Shown here piece by piece: positions 1 to 63,400 of a stretch of DNA of 64,000 nucleotides. Position 1 is the first letter of the stretch. The number at the start of each line of letters is the position of its first letter. Both the position numbers and the translations under genes were made by a program. The DNA comes from Octopus sinensis (Eukaryota): assembly GCF_006345805.1 (NCBI RefSeq), contig NC_043007.1:62992001-63056000 (forward strand), given 5' to 3'. The notes under the pieces are model-generated. The model was not told where the DNA came from. It was given only the letters and a program-made list of their open reading frames with translations, and made no database searches.

Positions 1-1055
1 ATTTCTGACCAAAATACACCCCTTATGTGTTTCAATTAATTTCTAACATAATCGTAAATTTAGTCTGGTTTCATTAAACAACTATAACTTTTTTATTTAT
101 CAATATATTAATGTGATTTTTGGAAGATAATTTAATGAAATGTTCTCAACCAATTCTATACTATAATTTTTGTCACAAAGTGACTCTAATTGCAGGTAGA
201 TACAGGTAAATTCAACAAAATATAAAATTATTAAAATTTTGTTCAAACATCGCTATAGAAAATGGGTTATTAGCTAATATTCAGTTGGGTATACAACAAA
301 ATTTTATGATAGAATTTGTTATTCTGGGTAACTTTCTGATACCCATAATAATATTTAAGGCAAAATAGTCTTAATTTCATTTAAGGTTGTGGGAAACCAC
401 TAACTATCCTTTCTTTCACTTTGTTTACATTTAGCGTAACGGTTCGTTTCCGCCGTAATGAGTTCAAATAGACTCATCGGAAAAAGTAAAAAGAAATAGT
501 CTATCACTTTACTCTCCTGGGAAAGTCTGTGGCTTGGTCCAGTTTCTTCAGAAAAATCATCGAAAGAAACAGTTTTTAAATTTTCACTCCATTCAGGTGC
601 CAATTCATTTTCTTTATCGCTGTTTTCACTGATTCACTGTTTTCACTTTCGGAAAATGAAACATCAGATCCATTATCAAATACCACGTGCTTTTTTTTTT
701 TTTTAAGTCATAGAGTTAGATTTCTTCAGTAGAAAATCCTTCGAATTCTGACTCGCTGCTTGATATAATGAAATTCGTATCCATTTTTTGTCATAATTAC
801 AAATTTTGAAAACACAATAGGAACAAATTTCAGAAAAAAATCTCCCAAAATTCACGGAATTAAAATTACACTTCGATCGTTGTACAAAACTGTAGATTAA
901 CTGTTTACGAAGTATAATCACTTGTTTTCACGAATGTACTAAAGGGATTTGCTCTGATATTCTCATTTAAATATGAATAGGTAAATACGGGCGGGTTTGG
1001 TCACATTAACCAAAATTTTTTTCGGGTGGCTTTGGGCAGTTTGGTAACGAAAGGG
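1..1055 (-). mobile_element. Internally deleted piggyBac-like DNA transposon remnant
   Basis: Minus-strand ORF 400-603 (FDDFSEETGPS...YFFLLFP..LFELITAETNRYA) resembles the piggyBac transposase N-terminal region. The element ends at cgaaaggg (1055) followed by TTAA (1056-1059), i.e. TTAA-CCCTTTCG on the minus strand. The other end probably lies just before the window (inference). Confidence 0.7.
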
Positions 1056-2749
1056 TTAATCATATTATTCAGTTAGGGCTGACCTGGGTCTAAACAACAA
1101 CTAAAGTCACTATGACTATTAGTGCAGTGAAACATATTGGTTATATAGTTAAAATTATGTTTCTTGCAATGGCTGTAGAGTAGTTTAAATACAAAACTCT
1201 ATGAGCAGTCTAACCACTCGGCTACCAATCTTAATCAATTATTTGTTAGTGACTATCATTGCAGATCTCCCATGTTATTCATTTACTAAAGTGATGCATC
1301 TAAGTTCCCTCTAATCTGATAGGGATATATTTATAAACTTTCAGAGGAAAACCTGAGGAAATACAGTGATATTGCCCAAGTTCTCAAGGGTGACAGTGAT
1401 GAATATAGAAATGTAGACAATATTGATATACTGCAAGTTCTGTAAGAAGTTGAAATGTGACTGGTTTCTTTTACTGCATCTTACTCTTCTCTTTAAAATT
1501 AGATTAGCAGTGGGAGGAGTCTTGTTTCTATTGAGTCTGGAAATAATTTGACAGCTAAATTTATAAATAAATAAAATAAATAAAACTGATTCGATATAGC
1601 ATTAAATTTAGTTTTCATAATTTGTCTGACAATTTAGCTTTGAGAAAAGGTTTAGACAAATGCAGTTTGTGAAAATTCAACATTGAATTGAGGACTTATT
1701 GAAATTTTTTATTGATATAAAATTTGAAACATTTAATCTTGAGTCTTTATATCCTTTGAGTGTTTTTCAAGTTTGATTAACACTTTAAATAAGAGGTGTT
1801 TGCAATAAGTAATATCACATGATAGTTGGAAGGCTGTTGACCAGAACCACTGAAGATTCTCTTGAATAAGAAAAGTCATGAGAAAAGGAGATTAATGTGG
1901 TGAAGTCAACTGGAAATAAAAAATATAAAGTTGTGTCATGTAATTCTATATATGTATGTAAATATAGATACTTAAACAAGTCACTTTATTGCATATGTAA
2001 ATGAGTGATCAAATTTATTTGTGAGTGAAATGAAATGGGTGTCACTCTGGAACTTAAAATATGATTATAGATTCATTTCAGAGAAGTCCTAACATTCTGT
2101 GATATATTTCAATATTAATTCATATTGCTCATAATTTTATATAACTCTTTTTTTTTTTCTTTTTCATGCTGGTAGTGGACATCATTAGATTTATTCTTGA
2201 AGTAGTTTAGTCTTCCAATCCAGGCATATTAGTGCCATTAATCCAGTAAAGAATCCAGTTGCAAAAATCTATTCATTTTCAAACAAAACCATTCAGAAAG
2301 GCCACTTATTGACAGTAACCAATTACTGCCAGGAAGCTGGTGGCTGTTGATTTCATAGTGATACTTGTGCTGAATTTGTTTTTTATTTGTTTTATTCATA
2401 CTAGGCTGCAAGAATTCCATATCAGTTGGTGGGGGAAGCAACTTAATAACTGTGATATTGGTAATGATATGACTTTATTACGAATGAAGCTCAGGATTGT
2501 GGAGATACTGAAAGTTAGTAGTTCATTCATGTTCAAGGATACCACTTTATTGACAGTTGCATCAAGGATTTTGACATCAAGCAATCAGCTCCAATTAATA
2601 GGATTACACTACCTGTTCCACTGAAGAGAGTTCATTCAAAACCAGCCTAGGAAAATGGTTATTAAAATAACCATCAAGTCAGCCACCTACTATTGACCCC
2701 AAATTGTCAATTAATTTTTTATAAATGCAGCTTCCATGAAAAAAAAAAC

Positions 2750-2905
2750 ATCCATTACACTATAAAGTGGTTGGCATTGAGAATGGTATCAAGCTGTAGA
2801 GACCATACCACAGCAGACATTGTAGCTTAGTAAAGCCCTCCAACTGAATCCTGATGGCACATCCAACCTATGCCAGCATGAAAAGCGGATGTTAAATGAT
2901 GATGC
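2750..2905 (+). mobile_element. 3' fragment of a common SINE-like element
   Basis: Ends ccaacctatgccagcatgaaaagcggatgttaaatgatgatg. The same 3' motif recurs near 17170-17222 and 50700-50750. Confidence 0.65.
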
Positions 2906-3207
2906 TGGTGATGACATACCAAGGTTAAATGGTATAATGTATATGACTTTTTCAAGAATACTAATAACATCATATCTCAAATTTTTTACTAAGTGTTAAT
3001 TTCTCTTTGCCAAGCACATATCACAGCAATCACTGATTAATTAATAGGCTTGAAACTTACAAGGAGAGAATAGGAGGCTATTATGTTCATACCTTTCTAA
3101 ATAACAATGTAAATGGAAATCAGAACAGTTGCAAACAACATGCTAGTACAATTCTCTTGGTAATGCAGACTTTAGGCATTACCAAGAAAATTAGTGCTAC
3201 TAATAAT

Positions 3208-3415
3208 CCTTTCTAATTTAGGCACAAGGCCTGAAATTTTGGGGTGGGGGCCAGTCAATTAGATTGACCCAGTACACAACTGGTACTTAATTTATCGACC
3301 CCCGCAAAACGATGAAAGGCAAAGTCGACCTCAGTGGAGTTTGAACTCAGAACGTAAAGACATGAAATACTAAGTATTTCACCTGGCGTGCTAACAATTC
3401 TGCCAGTTCACTGCC
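3208..3415 (-). mobile_element. tRNA-derived SINE with target-site duplication
   Basis: Minus strand shows an A-box-like tggcagaattgttag and a B-box-like gagttcaaact. Flanked by a 17-bp direct repeat ttagtgctactaataat (3191-3207 and 3416-3432). Confidence 0.85.
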
Positions 3416-4479
3416 TTAGTGCTACTAATAATGATAATAGTGATCATAAGTGATATACTTGACAAATAGACTATGATTGTGCTTGGTTAGAAATAATAAT
3501 GTTAATGATCTATTTTGATTAAGACAATTTTTGTAGAAGTATGGTTTCTTCAATCAAATCTAGTATATTACTGATACTTATATAATTGAGTCTAAGGTGA
3601 ATGTCAGGTAAAAATCAAACTCGACAGAAACAGTAAGTTACAGTTACCAAGTTAGATTTTATAAAATAACTCACTTGGAATTTTACTTCAAAGCCAGTTT
3701 GGTTGCCATAATTGGGATGAGGATAGGGGGAAAAAGAGTTGAAGAAACTGGAGTTGTTCTAACTAGGATGTTAGATATTCTTAGCAGGAGACTCTTCCAG
3801 ATTGTGTTCTCTAGGGAAATGTTTTTAAATAAATCCATATGCTTGTGAGCAATAAAGGAGATGATTGTAAAATTAAAAAAAAATAGCCAGTTTCATAGCA
3901 GCTTAGCTATATGAGAAGAGCTTATATTGAATAGAGTGCTCTCTAGTTTCAGTGCTCAGCTGGAACACCATCACTTACTTTATCTTTGGGAAAAGCTTAG
4001 ATTTCATAACGTCCCAGTTTCTTCACATTCTTTTAATACCCAATTGATTAATTATATATTGTCAAGAGATTCAATGGGCAAATAAAGTAAAATTTTTGAC
4101 AACCAGTTGTTTGATTCCTTCTCAGAAATTGTTTTATCACAGTCTTAGTAATACACTTTAATCTTAGCTAGGGTTTTGTATTCTTAAGAAATCATTTTTT
4201 TTTTTTATTACTGTAACTAATAGTAAAGTTTACTTTCATGGAATTTCCTTCTGCATTCAAATCTTGTCATGCAAACTTTGCTTGCCATCATTCTGAGTGT
4301 GATAAATAAAATAATCACCAGTCAATTACTGGGCTCAGTTGCTTCATCCCTTCTCCAATGTATGTAACCTTGTTCCAAAGGTTATTATTACAAATGTTCA
4401 ATTAATTTAGATGTCCTTTCTCAGAACTAAGATTAGTTCCTGGTTTGTTGGTAGCCTAAATTGAAGCAATTATCTTACC

Positions 4480-5560
4480 AGAAGAGATGATTGTCTTAAA
4501 TCAGTCCCTTTTACTCCCCCAGAAGCATTGGGTAGCAAGAAGTCTCCACACAGGCAGGTCTTCCTCTGCAGTCTTCAACTAGCTTTTGACAGTTCTGCTG
4601 CATCTGCTATGCCCTTCATGGGCATGTGTAGTACATGGCCAGGCATGTTCTGCCATTTCAGTGATGATACCTTGTAGGTTACTCAACCTGGCCCTTTCCA
4701 TGACTTCTTCATTTGTGATGTGGTGATGCCAAGAAATTCTTAGTATAGTTCTAAGTCAACTCTGTAGAAAACATCTGTTGTCCTATTGTTTCTGCTGGTC
4801 CTTTTACATGTCTCACAGGCATAAATGGCTGTCAATATAACATTACATTTATAGAAGCAGTGTTTGGTATTCTGTTTGGTGGAGGAGTTGGACCTTTCAG
4901 TTCAGATCCCGGAAGACAACTTCAGATTTGCTGAGTCTCTTTTCCACATCACTTCCTAAGCTTTTATTGTTTGCAGCGTTACTGTCTATATATGCGAATG
5001 AATGAATAGTCTCTAGAATTTGGCCCTTCAGCCAGAGATGTTGCCGCTGTGCAATACTTTGATCCTTTCATTGCTCCAAGGTTGACCTGAAGACCAACAT
5101 TGGAGCTGGTGTTATTGATATTGCTGGTCATCTCTTACATTACTATAGATGTGGTACTAAGGAGTCCTGGGTTATCGGCAAAGTCAAGATCTATGAATCT
5201 TCCCTGTCCCCCATTTGATGCTGAATGCTTGATTGCCTGTGGATTTCCTCATGTTGAAATCTACCACCAGCAGGAACCAAAGAAAGGGTAACAGTACACA
5301 TCCTTAAAGCACCCCTGTGACAATTCGTACCTTTTCTATGTTCTTATCTTTGGTTCTAACTTAGCAGTGTCTTTTGATAATCTGGTCACATAATATTGAT
5401 GTAGTAGGTGGGCACTTCATGCAACATGACAATTTTCTATAGAGACTTCTTGTGCAGGCTGTTAAAGGCCTTTTTGAAATAAATGACATTGACCACAAGT
5501 GGTTGCTAGCTCTCACAACTTGGTTTGATGGTGTGTAATGTGAAGATTTGTTCACTACAC
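4480..5560 (-). mobile_element. Decayed RTE-type LINE reverse transcriptase fragment
   Basis: Minus-strand FIDLDFADNPGLLS (~5158-5199) is a degraded RT (Y/F)ADD motif in RTE-like context. Many stops and frameshifts. Boundaries approximate. Confidence 0.6.
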
Positions 5561-5836
5561 AATCTTCCTCTTCTGAATCCCACCTCTTCTGCTCATAAAT
5601 ATGTCCTCCCTACTCACCTTCTAGTTGGACATTGGTAAGGAGTAAGGGATAATCAATGGGATGGGTGGAACATTTCCCTGCAGAGATTGTACAGTTAGTA
5701 ATTAAATTCAGTATATATATATTTTATTATTTTATCTTGCTTCTTTCTCTTTAACTTTAGCTCACTTAAAAAGCAGAGGACTTGGGCCATAAAGATTCTA
5801 ACAGAAGTTACGTGCTCTCTCTCTTGCTTTCTCTCT

Positions 5837-5838
<2 letters not shown>

Positions 5839-5874
<36 letters not shown>
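5839..5874. repeat. (CT)n microsatellite
   Basis: About 18 perfect CT units seen directly. Confidence 0.95.
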
Positions 5875-5879
<5 letters not shown>

Positions 5880-7470
5880 TCCCTCTCATAATAGATTTAA
5901 CCCATAACTGTGTGCTGTTTCTCATAGTTTTCATCAGTTAAATATTTATAACAGTTTGTATATGTAAGTGCCTCAGGATAATGAGAAACATTTGGCATGG
6001 GTTGATTTTGGTTTCCCAGTTATAACATTACTAATGTCTTTGAGAAAAGTATTTACATCATAATCTCATTTCCTCCTCCAAGAAATCTAATCATTGTCAC
6101 CCTTGTGTGAGAAACAATCATGCCACAGATATTGAAAATATGTGTATGTTTATGTTTCCATTATATTTTTGGAATTTAAAATGAAAATCAGAAATATTTC
6201 ATTTTTCATGTGGCAGTTCACCATCAATTCAATTAACTAAACATAATTTAACCAATACCATCTGGTGTCACCATGTAATTTAACTGTCATGGAAGCAATC
6301 TTCTGTAATAGTTTGTGCTAACAAAGCTTCCTGTCTGAACAATTGCTTCAACTATCCTATTATGCTATTTGCCTAATGTGGCCCATGCTCTGCATCTTCT
6401 CAAATTTGCTAAATATTTTCACTCCTAAAATCTGTAACATTTCAGATTGATTCATACAAAATATGTGCTATCAGATTAACTCATCTAAAATATGTTATTT
6501 TTATACCTGCCATGCTATTAAGAAATGCTTTTAGTTCATCATCATTTATTTATTTATTCATTTTCATATTGCAGTTATGTATACTGTTTCGTTTACTCAT
6601 TCTTTATTTTTCAATCCTGGCATAACTATGCCTTCACACTAAACCAGTCATGTATATGTATGGTTTCAGGTGTACATGCAATGGTATGTGTGCTTGTGTG
6701 TCATACTTTTTATGTAGAAGACATCCGTAGAAAATTAGACTTAATAAAATCTCAAAAGAAAAAGTTATGTCGGGCATGAAGGGGTACTGAATTTTAAACC
6801 CATTCGAATCCTGACAGTATGAAAAAGCTATCATTAAAATGTGTTGTAGAGAGGGTGATAGAAAATCAGGTACTATGTAAATATATCTTAAAGTTAGAAT
6901 TCTCTATAAAAAGTAATAAAAGTCATATTTACTTTCTACTAACTAGTTTTATATGATTTTATGGTATAATAGAAATTAAAAAAAAAAACTTTATCATTAT
7001 GGGATCATTATGGTTAAATGTTCACTCGTATAAATTTTTGTAACTCTTTAAAATTTATATATATATATATATCTTTTTAAAGCTTTACCTTAGTTTCATG
7101 TAGAAAGGTTAGAGGATAAAAAAATGATTTACCATACTTGAGAATATAAACATTCTGCAACTGGAAGAACTGTCATCTGTATTCTTAACTACCCAATCAG
7201 AAACCATATATTGACTTCATTTGACTCTGTTGAGGCATTGGCAATTTCAGTAAAACAACAGTCCACTTGCTATTGAGGTTTTTCAGGGTTTTTTTTAAGA
7301 ATATTGTAAAATTATATAAATTAAGTTGTAAATCTCCAGATTATGAGAAGTGTGTGGGGAAGGAACAATAAGCCAATAATTCATTTCATCTTGATTGCAG
7401 TTAAAATGGTAAGCTGGATGAATAGCATTTTATCTATACATCATTGCTTGCTAGCTTTCCACCCCCTCAG

Positions 7471-7500
7471 ATCATCAATTTGATAATGGCCGAAGAAATA
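7471..7500 (+). CDS. Candidate 30-nt Ena microexon (x-HQFDNGRRN-S/T)
   Basis: tgcttgctagctttccaccccctcag|ATCATCAATTTGATAATGGCCGAAGAAATA|gtcaga. Phase 1 to 1, open, compatible with exon 8558. Donor is weak. Confidence 0.45.
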
Positions 7501-8312
7501 GTCAGACAAAAATATATTGATGAAATTCTGCTATATAAAGAATAGACTGGTTTACTACTTGAGATATAATAATATTGTGTGTGTGTGTGTGTGCACGTGA
7601 ACGTATACATGTGTGTGTGTAACGTATGTATGTGTGTGTGTGTGTGTGTTCTGTTAAGAGATAATCAAAATGTTACTTTCATTTTCTACTGGTTAGCAAT
7701 TATTCCTTATAAAAGTTGTGACTTATTTCTTTAACTGAAATGTGGAGGTGTTGCTAAAAGCTATATAGCTGTTGCACCCTGAACACTACATTTATGTATT
7801 TCTGTATCACATGTTCATTTAATTATACTTAAAACTCTACTAAGCACAGATATTTTATGCTAAATAAAATCCTTTTAAATTTATACTAAGTTATATAAAC
7901 CAAACTAATAGTTTTTGTATTTGTTACTCTTGCATAAATTTGCTTTTCATAAATATTAATAAAATTACTTTTTTATCCTTTTCTCTCTCTTTCTATTTGT
8001 CTCTTTTACTGACTCACTTCCCCTATCTCTCTCTCTCTCTCCCTATCTCTCTCTCTCTCTGTAAAAATAAATCATGTTAAAATCAACTTTGTATGTCTGT
8101 CGGAGAAATTTCCAATTGTTCTCCCTCTCTAGCTGGCATTTGAAATGATAAACTTCCCATGTTATTTTACCATTATTGTGTACATCTCTTGATCGGCATG
8201 GATTGTATGGAATGAAGTATTGATTGCATGCGGTTGGCTGGTAGCTGCTACTATTTCACGTTGTATACCGGCTTGGTCGTGGTCTTCCCTGCTCGCTCTT
8301 CCTCTGTCTCAG

Positions 8313-8324
8313 CAAATGGGAATT
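8313..8324 (+). CDS. Candidate 12-nt Ena microexon (x-NGN-C)
   Basis: cctgctcgctcttcctctgtctcag|CAAATGGGAATT|gtcagt. Strong pyrimidine tract, TGC at 8290-8292, frame-preserving in phase 1. Confidence 0.5.
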
Positions 8325-8557
8325 GTCAGTCAGAAATGGAGTTTGAAAAATTCTCTCTGCCTTCATGTTGAAATATATGTGGAAAAAAGACACTTTTATT
8401 TTTAATTCAAAAAAATTAAGTCTAATTTTATGCCTTTGTACCTTGCATAGTGTCAGCTTGCACGAAAGCTCACACATTAGTTAAATGACTTGTGACTCAG
8501 TGAAAATGGTTGCTTGCACTAAAAAAGTAACAGAATGTGTGTATTTTGTTGTGACAG

Positions 8558-8666
8558 GTATGTACAGGACCCCACCTCCTGTGGCACCTCCACCTCAGCC
8601 ACCTCAGCCATCATCAATATATCAACACATTAATGTCAATGGACCCAAGGAACCAGAGACAGATAG
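8558..8666 (+). CDS. ena: Ena/VASP family protein, post-EVH1 linker exon (MYRTPPPVAPPPQPPQPSSIYQHINVNGPKEPETDR)
   Basis: gtattttgttgtgacag|GT ATG...GAT AG|gtaagt. 109 nt, phase 1 to 2, joins in frame to 56653. Proline-rich, with an NGP motif and R-split end like the vertebrate Mena exon after EVH1 as I recall it. Confidence 0.75.
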
Positions 8667-39489: not shown

Positions 39490-40570
39490 GCTGGAATAAC
39501 AACCAAGCTATGTTGAGTAATTTTCTCGTATGAGTACAAACTGGGTCACTCTGTTGCAGAAGTTCTATGGAATATCAAGCGGGCCTTTGGTAATGGTTTT
39601 GTTGACATCAGAACTGTTCAGAGAGGATTCCAAAGTTCTTGTTCAGGAGATGATAGCCTTGAAAATAAACCGGAGGCTAGGCCAAAATAAGTTATTCATC
39701 ATGATGGATTGAATGCTTTGGTTGAACAAAGGTTCAAAAACTTTGATCAGAACTCCAAACATCTCGCACAACTATTTTTGGACACCTGTAAAAAATTGGA
39801 GAAGTCAAGAAAACGGATAGGTTTGTTCCATATCGATGAACGAGATTCAGAAAAACAGATGCCTTGAAGTGTGCTCCTTATTGCTTTCTCGATTGGAAAA
39901 AGACCATTTTTGCATCAAATCATTACTTGTGATGAGAAATGGATACTCTTTGACAACAGCAAAACAGGACCGCGATTAGATGCAGGAGAGTCACCTAAAC
40001 ACTACCCAAACCCACCATTGCACCCTAAAAAGTTAGTAGTCATTGTATAGTGGTCTGCGAAGGGAGTTATTCATTATTCATTTTTGCAACAAGGAAAAAC
40101 TGTAACAGCAACATTGTATTGCCAGGAAATTGATTATATGCATGAGACTTTGAAAAAGAAGCAACCCAGGCTAGTAAATAGTGATGGCCCAATTTTGCTC
40201 CACAACAATGCACATCCTCACATTCTTCAAGCTACGGTCCAAAAGTAGCAAAACCTGAATTGATATTTTGCAACATCCTCCCTATTTCCCTGATATCGCT
40301 CCTAGTGATCATCACTTTTTAAAATATTTTGAACTTTTCATAAGTAATAAAACATTCTTAAATAAAGAAGTAATTGAAGCATTCGGACAGTTTATCACAG
40401 GAAAAAGATGAATTTTTTTTAAAGATGGAATATATGACATAGAGAAACATTGGGTAAACATCATAAATGAACATAGATCATATTTTGATTTTAAAGAATC
40501 AGTTCTCTAACACTTCTGAAACATTCTATTGTTACCTTTCAAATACGACATTTCATGTGAAACAACCTAA
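39490..40570 (+). mobile_element. Decayed mariner (Hsmar1/cecropia-like transposase)
   Basis: YEYKLGHS, IITCDEKW, LHPKKL, LLHNNAHPH, HPPYFPDIAPSD. Right TIR-like end aacaacctaa-TA at 40561-40572. Left end not recognised. Confidence 0.85.
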
Positions 40571-56652: not shown

Positions 56653-56717
56653 AATACAGCGAGATGAAATGAAAAGCCAACATCAACGTCAGCTGTCTGG
56701 TGGAGTTAACAATATAG
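56653..56717 (+). CDS. ena: Ena/VASP family protein, linker exon (RIQRDEMKSQHQRQLSGGVNNIG)
   Basis: ctattcatttcag|A ATA CAG...ATA G|gtaaga. 65 nt, phase 2 to 1, bridges exons 8558-8666 and 58941-59275 without a stop. Confidence 0.75.
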
Positions 56718-58940: not shown

Positions 58941-59275
58941 GAATGAAGGATCCTTCACCCCAGTCTATGATGATGGCAAACTCTGCTGGAACTCTTAATA
59001 GGGAACAGGTATCTTCTTCGTCTCAGCCGCCTGTAGCACCACCGGTGCCCCCTGCACCACCCGGGCCACCTCCAGCAATGACCGGTCCACCCAAGCCCCC
59101 AGCTGCTCCTACTGTGCCAGTAGCACCCCAGCCTCCACCTGTTGGAGCACCACCACCACCCCCTCCCCCACCACCTCTTCCAACAAATAGCTCGGCCGTA
59201 GCTGCACCTCTGCCGACTGGAGGAGGGGGACTTGCTGAAGCACTCCAGAAAGCCAAGTTAAAGTCTGTTGCACGG
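58941..59275 (+). CDS. ena: Ena/VASP family protein, proline-rich domain and EVH2 G-actin-binding motif exon
   Basis: ttctctttacag|GA ATG AAG...GCA CGG|gtaagt. 335 nt, phase 1 to 0. P9 poly-proline then GGGLAEALQKAKLKSVAR, comparable to Mena GLAAAIAGAKLRKVSR. Confidence 0.85.
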
Positions 59276-62605: not shown

Positions 62606-63400
62606 ACACACTAGCTCTTCCACTCGATCATGCATTAACTCTTCTACTCACTCATGTGCTAGCACTGCACTAGCTCACACAAACTCTTCCACTCTCACAT
62701 GCACTAGCTCTTCCACTCTCACATGCACTAGCACTTCCACTCTCACATGCACTAGCTCTTCCACTCTCACATGGACTATCTCTTTCACCCTCATGCACTA
62801 GCTCTTCTACTCTCACACACTAGCTCTTCCACTCTCACACACTAGCTCTTCCACTCTCACACGTACTAGCTCTTCCACTCTCACACACACTAGCTCTTCC
62901 ACTCTCACACGCAGTAACTTTTCCACTCTTGTGTGAACTAGCTCTTCCACTCTCGCGCACTAGCTCTTTCATTCCCATGTGCACTAGCTCTCCCGCATGC
63001 ACTAGCTCTCCCGCTCCCGCGCGCACTAGCTCTTCCACTCTCACGTGCACTAGCTCTTCCGCTCTCTCGCGTACTAGCCCTTTCATTCCCATGTGCACTA
63101 GCTCTCCCGCGTGCACTAGCTCTCCTGCTCCCGCGTGCACTAGCTCTCCTGCTCCCGCACGCACTAGCTCTCCCACTCCCGCGCGCACTAGCTCTTCCAC
63201 TCTCACGTGCACTAGCTCTTCCGCTCTCTCTCTCACGCACTAGCTCGTTCGCTCCCACACACACTATCTTGTTCGCTCTCACGCACACTAGCTCGTCCGC
63301 TCCCACGCACACTAGCTCTTCTACTCCCGCGCAGACTAGCTCTTCCGCTCCCATGCGGACTAGCTCTCCCGCTCCCACATGCACTAGCTCTTCCACTCGT
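62606..63400. repeat. GC-rich minisatellite, ~32 units of 18-24 bp (gcactagctcttccactctcacat)
   Basis: Core cactagctc recurs with a main period of 24 nt. A higher-order block of ~114 bp is present twice (~62945-63175). Confidence 0.95.

What the first reader, a model, noticed from the sequence alone, without database searches (positions are those of the whole stretch)
8313..8324. 12-nt microexon at the position of the vertebrate Mena '++' insert
Seen: strong acceptor, TGC at -23, gtcagt donor, 233 nt before exon 8558. It changes x-G-MYR to x-NGN-C-MYR. Established: vertebrate Mena has a 4-aa (++) and a 19-aa (INV) alternative insert right after EVH1. Inference: exon 8558 looks like the counterpart of the following vertebrate exon (NGP motif, phases 1 to 2, recalled from memory), so this is either a very old microexon position or a convergent gain.
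Basis: partly seen in the sequence, partly recalled or inferred. Interest (0 to 1): 0.7.

Follow-up and report, generated by a model that had tools for sequence, protein, structure and literature searches.

The report
Unsupported 12-nt microexon candidate, octopus Ena/VASP
The 12 bases really do look like a tiny in-frame exon, in the octopus Ena/VASP intron that matches the one carrying the vertebrate Mena '++' microexon, but no transcript or annotation includes them and a squid-side relative does not keep them, so they are most likely not a used exon.

Summary
The window is part of the 202-kb Ena/VASP gene of Octopus vulgaris/O. sinensis (XP_029642575.1). It holds three exons: 8558-8666, 56653-56717 and 58941-59275. 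The EVH1 exons lie upstream of the window.

CAAATGGGAATT (8313-8324) follows a very strong acceptor, has its only TGC at -23 and a 69-nt AG-free zone, is followed by gtcagt, and lies 233 nt before exon 8558. The upstream base is T, not G, so inclusion would insert SNGN cleanly (TLE-C-MYR becomes TLE-SNGN-C-MYR).

The positional claim holds. The intron is phase 1 in octopus, Patella, Lineus and lamprey. The following exon runs phase 1 to 2 everywhere, with the NGP motif. Bird ENAH isoforms carry the 4-aa insert VFYL exactly there.

Nothing shows the 12 nt are spliced in:
- The donor is weak (2 bits against 9-12 for the real exons).
- No cephalopod transcript or annotated isoform has an insert there.
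- A decapodiform genomic contig keeps the acceptor-like site but only 7, 10 or 13-nt options.
- No isoform set from nine other invertebrate lineages has an insert at this junction.

Most likely this is a pseudo-exon inside a conserved intronic block. A real octopod-specific, convergent microexon remains possible (about 15%).

The parts
8313..8324 (+). Candidate 12-nt microexon CAAATGGGAATT. In phase 1 it would insert Ser-Asn-Gly-Asn before Cys114.
   Evidence: Sequence; frame check with upstream T gives SNGNC. No transcript support.
8244..8312 (+). Acceptor region: 69-nt AG-free zone, TGC at 8290-8292 (-23), pyrimidine tract tcgctcttcctctgtctc, then CAG.
   Evidence: Acceptor score 13.4 bits, top 3 of 3570 AG sites on the + strand. 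An acceptor-like site is kept in decapodiform L001 at position 307 (7.7 bits).
8325..8330 (+). Putative donor gtcagt (exon side ATT); weak.
   Evidence: 2.0 bits against 9.2-11.8 for the three real donors; 24% of all GTs score as well. Replaced by GCAAGC in L001.
8325..8557 (+). 233-nt interval between the candidate and exon A. It would be a mini-intron if the candidate were used.
   Evidence: Coordinates.
8133..8352 (+). Conserved non-coding block 1 (octopus against decapodiform) that embeds the candidate. Its core is an invariant 18-mer TGGTAGCTGCTACTATTT at 8239-8256 and a conserved GCATG at 8196-8200.
   Evidence: Local alignment to L001:142-347. 154 matches in 233 columns, 80% identity without gaps, score 127 against a maximum of 62 in 100 shuffles. 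Single copy in the window. No conserved reading frame. No Rfam family.
8485..8557 (+). Conserved block 2 directly upstream of exon A. It is an ORF MTCDSVKMVACTKKVTECVYFVVTG in frame with exon A, and equals the N-terminus of O. vulgaris model CAI9730135.1.
   Evidence: About 89% identity to L001 with no length change. 11 differences, 7 of them at codon position 3; 21 of 24 residues identical. P0141 sequence.
8558..8666 (+). Exon A of the Ena/VASP gene (linker exon, phase 1 to 2): (C)MYRTPPPVAPPPQPPQPSSIYQHINVNGPKEPETD(R).
   Evidence: 100% match to P0018 residues 114-149. Orthologous exon structure in Patella, Lineus and lamprey.
56653..56717 (+). Exon B (phase 2 to 1): (R)IQRDEMKSQHQRQLSGGVNNI(G).
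   Evidence: tblastn and sequence.
58941..59275 (+). Exon C: proline-rich region and G-actin-binding motif ...GGGGLAEALQKAKLKSVAR.

Best explanation
The 12 bases are most likely not a used exon. They are an in-frame, splice-site-like pair: a CT-rich tract ending in CAG, followed 12 nt later by a poor GT. The pair lies inside a conserved non-coding block of the very long phase-1 intron between the EVH1 exons and the linker exon of the octopus Ena/VASP gene.

Shown:
- The gene identity and the exon structure.
- The phase-1 intron and its positional match to the vertebrate ENAH intron that holds the ++ (VFYL) microexon.
- The weak donor.
- The lack of any isoform with an insert.
- The lack of a conserved 3n exon in a decapodiform.

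Inferred:
- The conservation around the candidate serves something other than this microexon. One candidate is regulation of, or transcription start for, an EVH1-less isoform that begins at the conserved ORF 8485-8557 (O. vulgaris model CAI9730135.1). Another is splicing control of exon A.
For: - The window exons equal O. vulgaris/O. sinensis VASP-like P0018.
- None of the following has an insert between EVH1 and MYRTPPP: O. sinensis X1 and X2, two O. vulgaris models, the partial O. bimaculoides model, Argonauta, one Logan octopus transcript, and seven decapodiform transcript-derived isoforms from at least two species. The same set does reveal other alternative exons, so alternative splicing was detectable.
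- Donor 2.0 bits against 9.2-11.8 for real donors.
- Decapodiform contig L001 aligns through the site but offers only 7, 10 or 13-nt options and GC instead of GT at the aligned donor.
- No insert at this junction in about 57 annotated isoforms from 9 invertebrate lineages.
- SRRM-type microexons typically have strong 5' splice sites, with the UGC between the pyrimidine tract and the AG (10.1101/2024.09.17.613571). Here the 5' site is weak and the UGC lies upstream of the tract.
Against: - The acceptor is among the three best in 64 kb and has a long AG-free zone and a UGC.
- The summed site score (15.4) is within the range of the real exons (14.8-23.4).
- The acceptor-like site and its upstream flank are conserved across the octopus-decapodiform split.
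- A 233-nt downstream mini-intron could tolerate a weak donor.
- The transcript sample for Octopus itself is very thin: one assembled transcript plus annotation models. 12-nt exons are easily missed by aligners and annotators, and tissue-restricted inclusion could not be tested here.
Confidence: 0.6

Rival explanations
1. A genuine microexon that is octopod-specific (or specific to Octopus) and tissue-restricted, probably neural. It would insert SNGN right after the EVH1 domain. It would have been gained independently in the same ancestral phase-1 intron as the vertebrate Enah ++ microexon.
For: - Strong acceptor, UGC at -23, 69-nt AG-free zone, 3n length, open frame and clean insertion.
- Conserved upstream intronic flank.
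- The intron is positionally orthologous to the vertebrate one.
- Microexon programmes are known to evolve convergently between phyla (PMC8797185).
Against: - No transcript or annotation with the insert.
- Weak donor.
- Not a 3n exon in the decapodiform relative.
- The UGC lies upstream of the pyrimidine tract, not between it and the AG, unlike the described architecture.
Confidence: 0.17
2. The acceptor at 8313 is real but serves another product: a 5'-extended exon A (8313-8666) or retention of the 233 nt. In the EVH1 frame this stops after 19 residues (SNGNCQSEMEFEKFSLPSC*). That would give an EVH1-only or NMD-targeted transcript. It would also leave the downstream ORF from ATG 8485 as the longest ORF, which could be the origin of model CAI9730135.1.
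For: - The acceptor-like site is conserved in L001.
- The O. vulgaris annotation has a second model whose CDS starts at window 8485 and reads through the exon A acceptor.
- The stop lies at 8369-8371 in the EVH1 frame.
Against: - The transcript behind the model was not seen here. It could equally come from an internal promoter or from unspliced pre-mRNA.
- The tail peptide is not conserved in L001.
Confidence: 0.12
3. An ancient bilaterian microexon, homologous to vertebrate Mena ++.
For: Same intron, same phase, same 12-nt length.
Against: - The peptides are unrelated (SNGN against VFYL).
- Absent from decapodiform cephalopods, other molluscs, nemerteans, amphioxus and arthropods in the annotated isoforms.
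- Fly and mammal microexon programmes share only four exon positions, mostly by convergence (PMC8797185).
Confidence: 0.02

Closest known systems
Vertebrate Enah/Mena '++' microexon (12 nt, 4 aa) and the INV/+++ exon (19 aa)
   Same: Same gene family. Same intron by position: a phase-1 intron between the last EVH1 exon and the NGP linker exon. Same 12-nt length. Frame-preserving insertion just after EVH1.
   Different: The vertebrate exon encodes VFYL and is present in annotated isoforms. The octopus candidate would encode SNGN, has no transcript support and has a weak donor. No intermediate lineage shows an insert there.
SRRM3/4 (eMIC)-dependent neuronal microexons
   Same: Length of 27 nt or less and a multiple of 3, UGC upstream of the 3' splice site, UCU/CUC-rich tract, long distance free of AG.
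   Different: The described architecture has the UGC between the pyrimidine tract and the AG, a weak 3' context and a strong 5' splice site. Here the 3' site is strong, the UGC is upstream of the tract and the 5' site is weak. Dependence on octopus Srrm234 is untested.
Intronic pseudo-exons (decoy splice-site pairs in long introns)
   Same: A good acceptor-like CT-rich tract with a nearby weak GT in a gene of more than 200 kb with huge introns. No expression evidence.
   Different: It sits in a block conserved between octopus and decapodiforms, which ordinary pseudo-exons are not.

Membership tests
Ena/VASP gene (host gene) | Encodes EVH1 (WH1) + proline-rich region + EVH2 with a tetramerisation coiled coil | tested here: met
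   The window exons match P0018 at 100% (O. vulgaris CAI9730134.1 / O. sinensis XP_029642575.1). P0018 carries PF00568 and PF08776. The EVH1 exons themselves are outside the window.
Orthologue of the vertebrate Enah ++ microexon | Lies in the orthologous intron (EVH1/linker boundary, phase 1) | tested here: met
   Phase 1 in octopus (window), Patella, Lineus and lamprey. The downstream exon runs phase 1 to 2 with the NGP motif in all. The VFYL insert sits exactly before GPTLPRQ in bird ENAH. Daphnia differs: phase 0, three codons earlier.
Orthologue of the vertebrate Enah ++ microexon | Related exon or peptide sequence | tested here: not met
   SNGN against VFYL.
Orthologue of the vertebrate Enah ++ microexon | Present in lineages between cephalopods and vertebrates | tested here: not met
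   No insert at the junction in the annotated isoform sets of Lineus, Tubulanus, Argopecten, Ruditapes, Patella, Gigantopelta, Branchiostoma, Daphnia and Schistocerca. This rests on annotations only, so tiny exons could have been missed.
Functional cassette microexon | Inclusion in mature transcripts | tested here: not met
   No insert in any cephalopod protein or transcript retrieved. Raw RNA-seq reads could not be searched with these tools, so tissue-restricted inclusion is not excluded.
Functional cassette microexon | Conservation of the exon, its frame and both splice sites in related species | tested here: not met
   Decapodiform L001 keeps an AG with a pyrimidine tract, but the exon options are 7, 10 or 13 nt and the aligned donor is GC. 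Other octopod genomes could not be fetched because the gene ranges exceed 100 kb.
eMIC/SRRM-dependent neuronal microexon | UGC between the pyrimidine tract or branch point and the AG | tested here: inconclusive
   A single TGC at -23, lying between two pyrimidine runs and upstream of the main tract. Architecture as described in 10.1101/2024.09.17.613571.
eMIC/SRRM-dependent neuronal microexon | Strong 5' splice site | tested here: not met
   ATT|gtcagt scores 2.0 bits against 9.2-11.8 for the gene's real donors, using a crude matrix.
eMIC/SRRM-dependent neuronal microexon | Neural-specific, Srrm234-dependent inclusion | not testable with these tools
   Needs tissue RNA-seq or a minigene assay.

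The most novel reading that the evidence does not exclude
Octopus uses a lineage-specific 12-nt (SNGN) neural microexon in the same ancient phase-1 intron, directly after EVH1, in which vertebrates independently evolved the Enah ++ (VFYL) and INV exons. This would be a case of convergent microexon gain at one hot spot of an actin regulator in two large-brained lineages.
Probability: 0.15. Interest if true: 0.55.

Novelty: not a real feature. Interest (0 to 1): 0.2.

Why it matters
If it were real, it would be a rare example of convergent microexon evolution at the same intron of the same cytoskeletal gene in cephalopods and vertebrates. That would bear on how neural splicing programmes assemble independently. 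As it stands, the solid results are ordinary:
- The window is the octopus Ena/VASP gene.
- Its EVH1/linker intron and linker exon are structurally orthologous to those of vertebrates.
- The 12-nt candidate has no expression or conservation support.

The conserved intronic blocks, and the possible EVH1-less isoform start next to the candidate, may be the more useful leads.

Tried and rejected
- EVH1 exons in window 1-8312: none found with a recalled Mena EVH1 or with P0003. They lie upstream of the window.
- Protein search with the ORF containing exon A returned nothing, oddly. An exact look-up of that ORF also returned nothing.
- Fetching octopod genomic DNA (O. vulgaris, Argonauta, O. bimaculoides) failed because the gene ranges are 170-202 kb.
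- Look-ups failed for the bird isoform that includes the microexon and for CAI9730135.1, because only the longest product of a gene is indexed.
- Recursive-splicing site: rejected, because the AG is followed by CAAATG and not by GT.
- Longer exon from the same acceptor: the only 3n option (54 nt, donor CAT|gttgaa) scores -3.0 bits.
- Block 1 as coding sequence: rejected. The reading frames differ between octopus and L001, and the indels are not multiples of 3.
- Block 1 as a repeat or transposon: rejected; it is single copy in the window.
- Known RNA family: none in the whole window.
- The decapodiform 14-aa alternative exon and the Gigantopelta and amphioxus alternative exons were not found in the window.

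Full report
**1. What is in the sequence**

Window 8313-8324 is CAAATGGGAATT. It is preceded by ...ggtcttcccTGCtcgctcttcctctgtctcag and followed by gtcagt. The TGC at -23 is the only one within 60 nt. The nearest upstream AG ends at 8244, so the AG-free zone is 69 nt. Exon 8558-8666 starts 233 nt downstream.

**2. Identity of the gene**

Two exon translations found only two Logan genomic ORFs at first. An exhaustive HMMER search then found a full-length 436-aa Ena/VASP protein, P0003. A profile of its cluster found P0018. P0018 is O. vulgaris CAI9730134.1 and O. sinensis XP_029642575.1, named 'vasodilator-stimulated phosphoprotein isoform X2', with WH1 and VASP_tetra domains.

The window matches P0018 exactly in three exons:

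| Exon | Coordinates | Phase | Content |
|---|---|---|---|
| A | 8558-8666 | 1 to 2 | linker with NGP motif |
| B | 56653-56717 | 2 to 1 | IQRDEMKS... |
| C | 58941-59275 | starts in phase 1 | proline-rich region and G-actin-binding motif |

The EVH1 exons are upstream of the window. The whole gene spans 202 kb in O. vulgaris.

P0018 reads ...SALETLE-C-MYRTPPP. The base contributed by the upstream exon is therefore T (T|GT). Inclusion of the 12 nt would give TLE-SNGN-C-MYR.

**3. Strength of the signals**

I scored sites with a crude consensus matrix written from general knowledge. It serves only as a relative yardstick.

| Site | Acceptor (bits) | Donor (bits) |
|---|---|---|
| Candidate 8313-8324 | 13.4 | 2.0 |
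| Exon A | 7.0 | 10.5 |
| Exon B | 5.6 | 9.2 |
| Exon C | 11.6 | 11.8 |

- The candidate acceptor is one of 3 such sites among 3570 AGs on the + strand.
- 24% of all GTs reach the candidate's donor score.
- A Markov-1 model expects 0.025 equally good in-frame pairs per 64 kb.
- Given the three CT-rich acceptors actually present, about 0.3 would be followed by such a donor in frame.
- The candidate is the best in-frame pair in the visible 8.5 kb of the intron, but it tops a continuous distribution.

Published SRRM3/4 microexon architecture has a UCU_CUC...UGC enhancer between the pyrimidine tract and the AG, a long branch-point-to-AG distance and a strong 5' splice site (10.1101/2024.09.17.613571). 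The candidate shares the long AG-free zone and a UGC. However, its UGC lies upstream of the main tract and its 5' site is weak.

**4. Expression evidence**

None of the cephalopod proteins retrieved has an insert between EVH1 and MYRTPPP. The set was:
- O. sinensis X1 and X2
- two O. vulgaris models
- the partial O. bimaculoides model
- Argonauta hians
- one Logan octopus transcript
- seven decapodiform transcript-derived isoforms from at least two species

The same set does show other alternative splicing:
- alternative first exons;
- a 14-aa exon after exon A in decapodiforms;
- a 7-8-aa exon before the coiled coil. In octopus this exon is INPVVPVP and is the only difference between X1 and X2.

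The Octopus sample is thin, and raw reads could not be searched.

**5. Conservation**

L001 is a 1317-bp genomic contig of a decapodiform relative. Its exon A translation is identical to that of P0003. It aligns to the window across the site.

- Block 1, window 8133-8352, aligns with 80% identity without gaps. The score is 127 against a maximum of 62 in shuffles.
- Block 2, 8471-8557, aligns at 89%.
- The flank downstream of exon A is no better than shuffled sequence.

L001 keeps an acceptor-like site (ctggcgtttgctctgtctag, 7.7 bits). What follows is ATGAGCGGTGGTGGCAAGC. The possible donors give 7, 10 or 13 nt, and the aligned donor is GC. The 12-nt in-frame exon is therefore not conserved, although its surroundings are.

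**6. Orthology with the Mena ++/INV position**

- The ++ (4 aa) and +++/INV (19 aa) inserts next to EVH1 are documented (PMC3728509). A 12-nt neuronal Enah microexon is mentioned in 10.64898/2026.05.13.725022.
- Hummingbird ENAH isoforms differ by VFYL between ...NSQEA and GPTLPRQ.
- In a lamprey Ena/VASP locus (L003), the last EVH1 exon ends GAC ACG A|gtaagc. The next exon begins acaag|GT CCC ACA. This is phase 1.
- Patella has AAT A|gtaagt ... cag|AT ATG TAT, phase 1, directly before MYR as in octopus.
- Lineus has GGT G|gtaagt ... gcag|CG TCT, phase 1.
- Daphnia has a phase-0 intron three codons earlier.
- The downstream exon has a length of 1 mod 3, the NGP+acidic motif and a terminal split Arg codon AG|gt in octopus, the decapodiform, Patella, Lineus and lamprey.

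However, isoform sets from nine invertebrate lineages show no variation at this junction. These were Lineus (6 isoforms), Tubulanus (4), Argopecten (9), Ruditapes (6), Branchiostoma (at least 10), Daphnia (9), Schistocerca (9), Patella (3) and Gigantopelta (2). Several of them vary at the next junction instead. Fly and mammalian microexon programmes share only four exon positions, mostly by convergence (PMC8797185). Common ancestry of an Ena microexon is therefore very unlikely.

**7. Verdict**

- The positional inference is supported.
- The claim that this is a microexon is unsupported and, on balance, unlikely. I put a pseudo-exon within a conserved intronic element at about 0.6.
- A real octopod-specific convergent microexon is at about 0.15-0.2.
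- Use of the acceptor for another product is at about 0.1.
- An ancient microexon is at about 0.02.

Junction reads from octopus neural RNA-seq would settle it.

Noticed in passing
window 8485-8557 (+), contiguous with exon A: The 73 nt just upstream of exon A form an ORF, MTCDSVKMVACTKKVTECVYFVVTG, in frame with exon A. This ORF is the N-terminus of the second O. vulgaris model, CAI9730135.1 (352 aa, no EVH1). Against the decapodiform contig there is no length change, 21 of 24 residues are identical, and 7 of 11 nucleotide differences fall on codon position 3 (p about 0.04). It may be a conserved EVH1-less isoform with its own start.
   Followed up: partly
window 8133-8352 (+): A conserved non-coding block shared with a decapodiform. 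Its invariant 18-mer TGGTAGCTGCTACTATTT (8239-8256) contains the palindrome GTAGCTGCTAC. There is a conserved GCATG (8196-8200), and a TGCATG (8225-8230) that is not conserved. The block is not coding, not repeated in the window and not an Rfam family. Its function is unknown.
   Followed up: partly
outside the window (C-terminal part of the same gene); proteins P0138 against P0018, P0139, P0010, P0015: The only annotated octopus isoform difference is an 8-aa (24-nt) cassette, INPVVPVP, between the F-actin-binding region and the coiled coil. Variants occur in Argonauta (NIPVAPVP) and in decapodiforms (TNLACPAP, KSFAVPS). By my recollection this is about where Mena has its 11a exon.
   Followed up: no
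junction after exon A (window 8666|56653) and its counterparts in other phyla: A recurrent alternative exon sits at the junction after the NGP linker exon: decapodiform SCQEDRKMAAETGS, Gigantopelta KALLMEWRK, amphioxus WGQDDQAISPYP, and 33 aa in Schistocerca. No counterpart was detectable in the 48-kb octopus intron in the window.
   Followed up: partly
L003 14239-14250 (lamprey Ena/VASP intron after EVH1): A 12-nt in-frame candidate TATTTGGTTGCT (I-F-G-C) with acceptor acaTGCgttTGCag and donor gtaaat. It might be the lamprey counterpart of the gnathostome VFYL microexon.
   Followed up: no
window 39517-40245 (+): A degraded mariner/Mos1-type transposase with three in-frame stops, inside the long intron. 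It matches Pfam Transposase_1 (E = 2e-20) and HTH_48.
   Followed up: yes
window 62609-63398: A GC-richer minisatellite: period 24 (higher-order periods 69, 114, 124), about 34 copies, 76% matches. It lies in the intron after exon C.
   Followed up: yes
(tool behaviour): The word-indexed protein search reported no candidate sharing three 5-mers with the 61-aa ORF. Yet P0002, found, shares many words with it. The negative result of that call should not be trusted.
   Followed up: no
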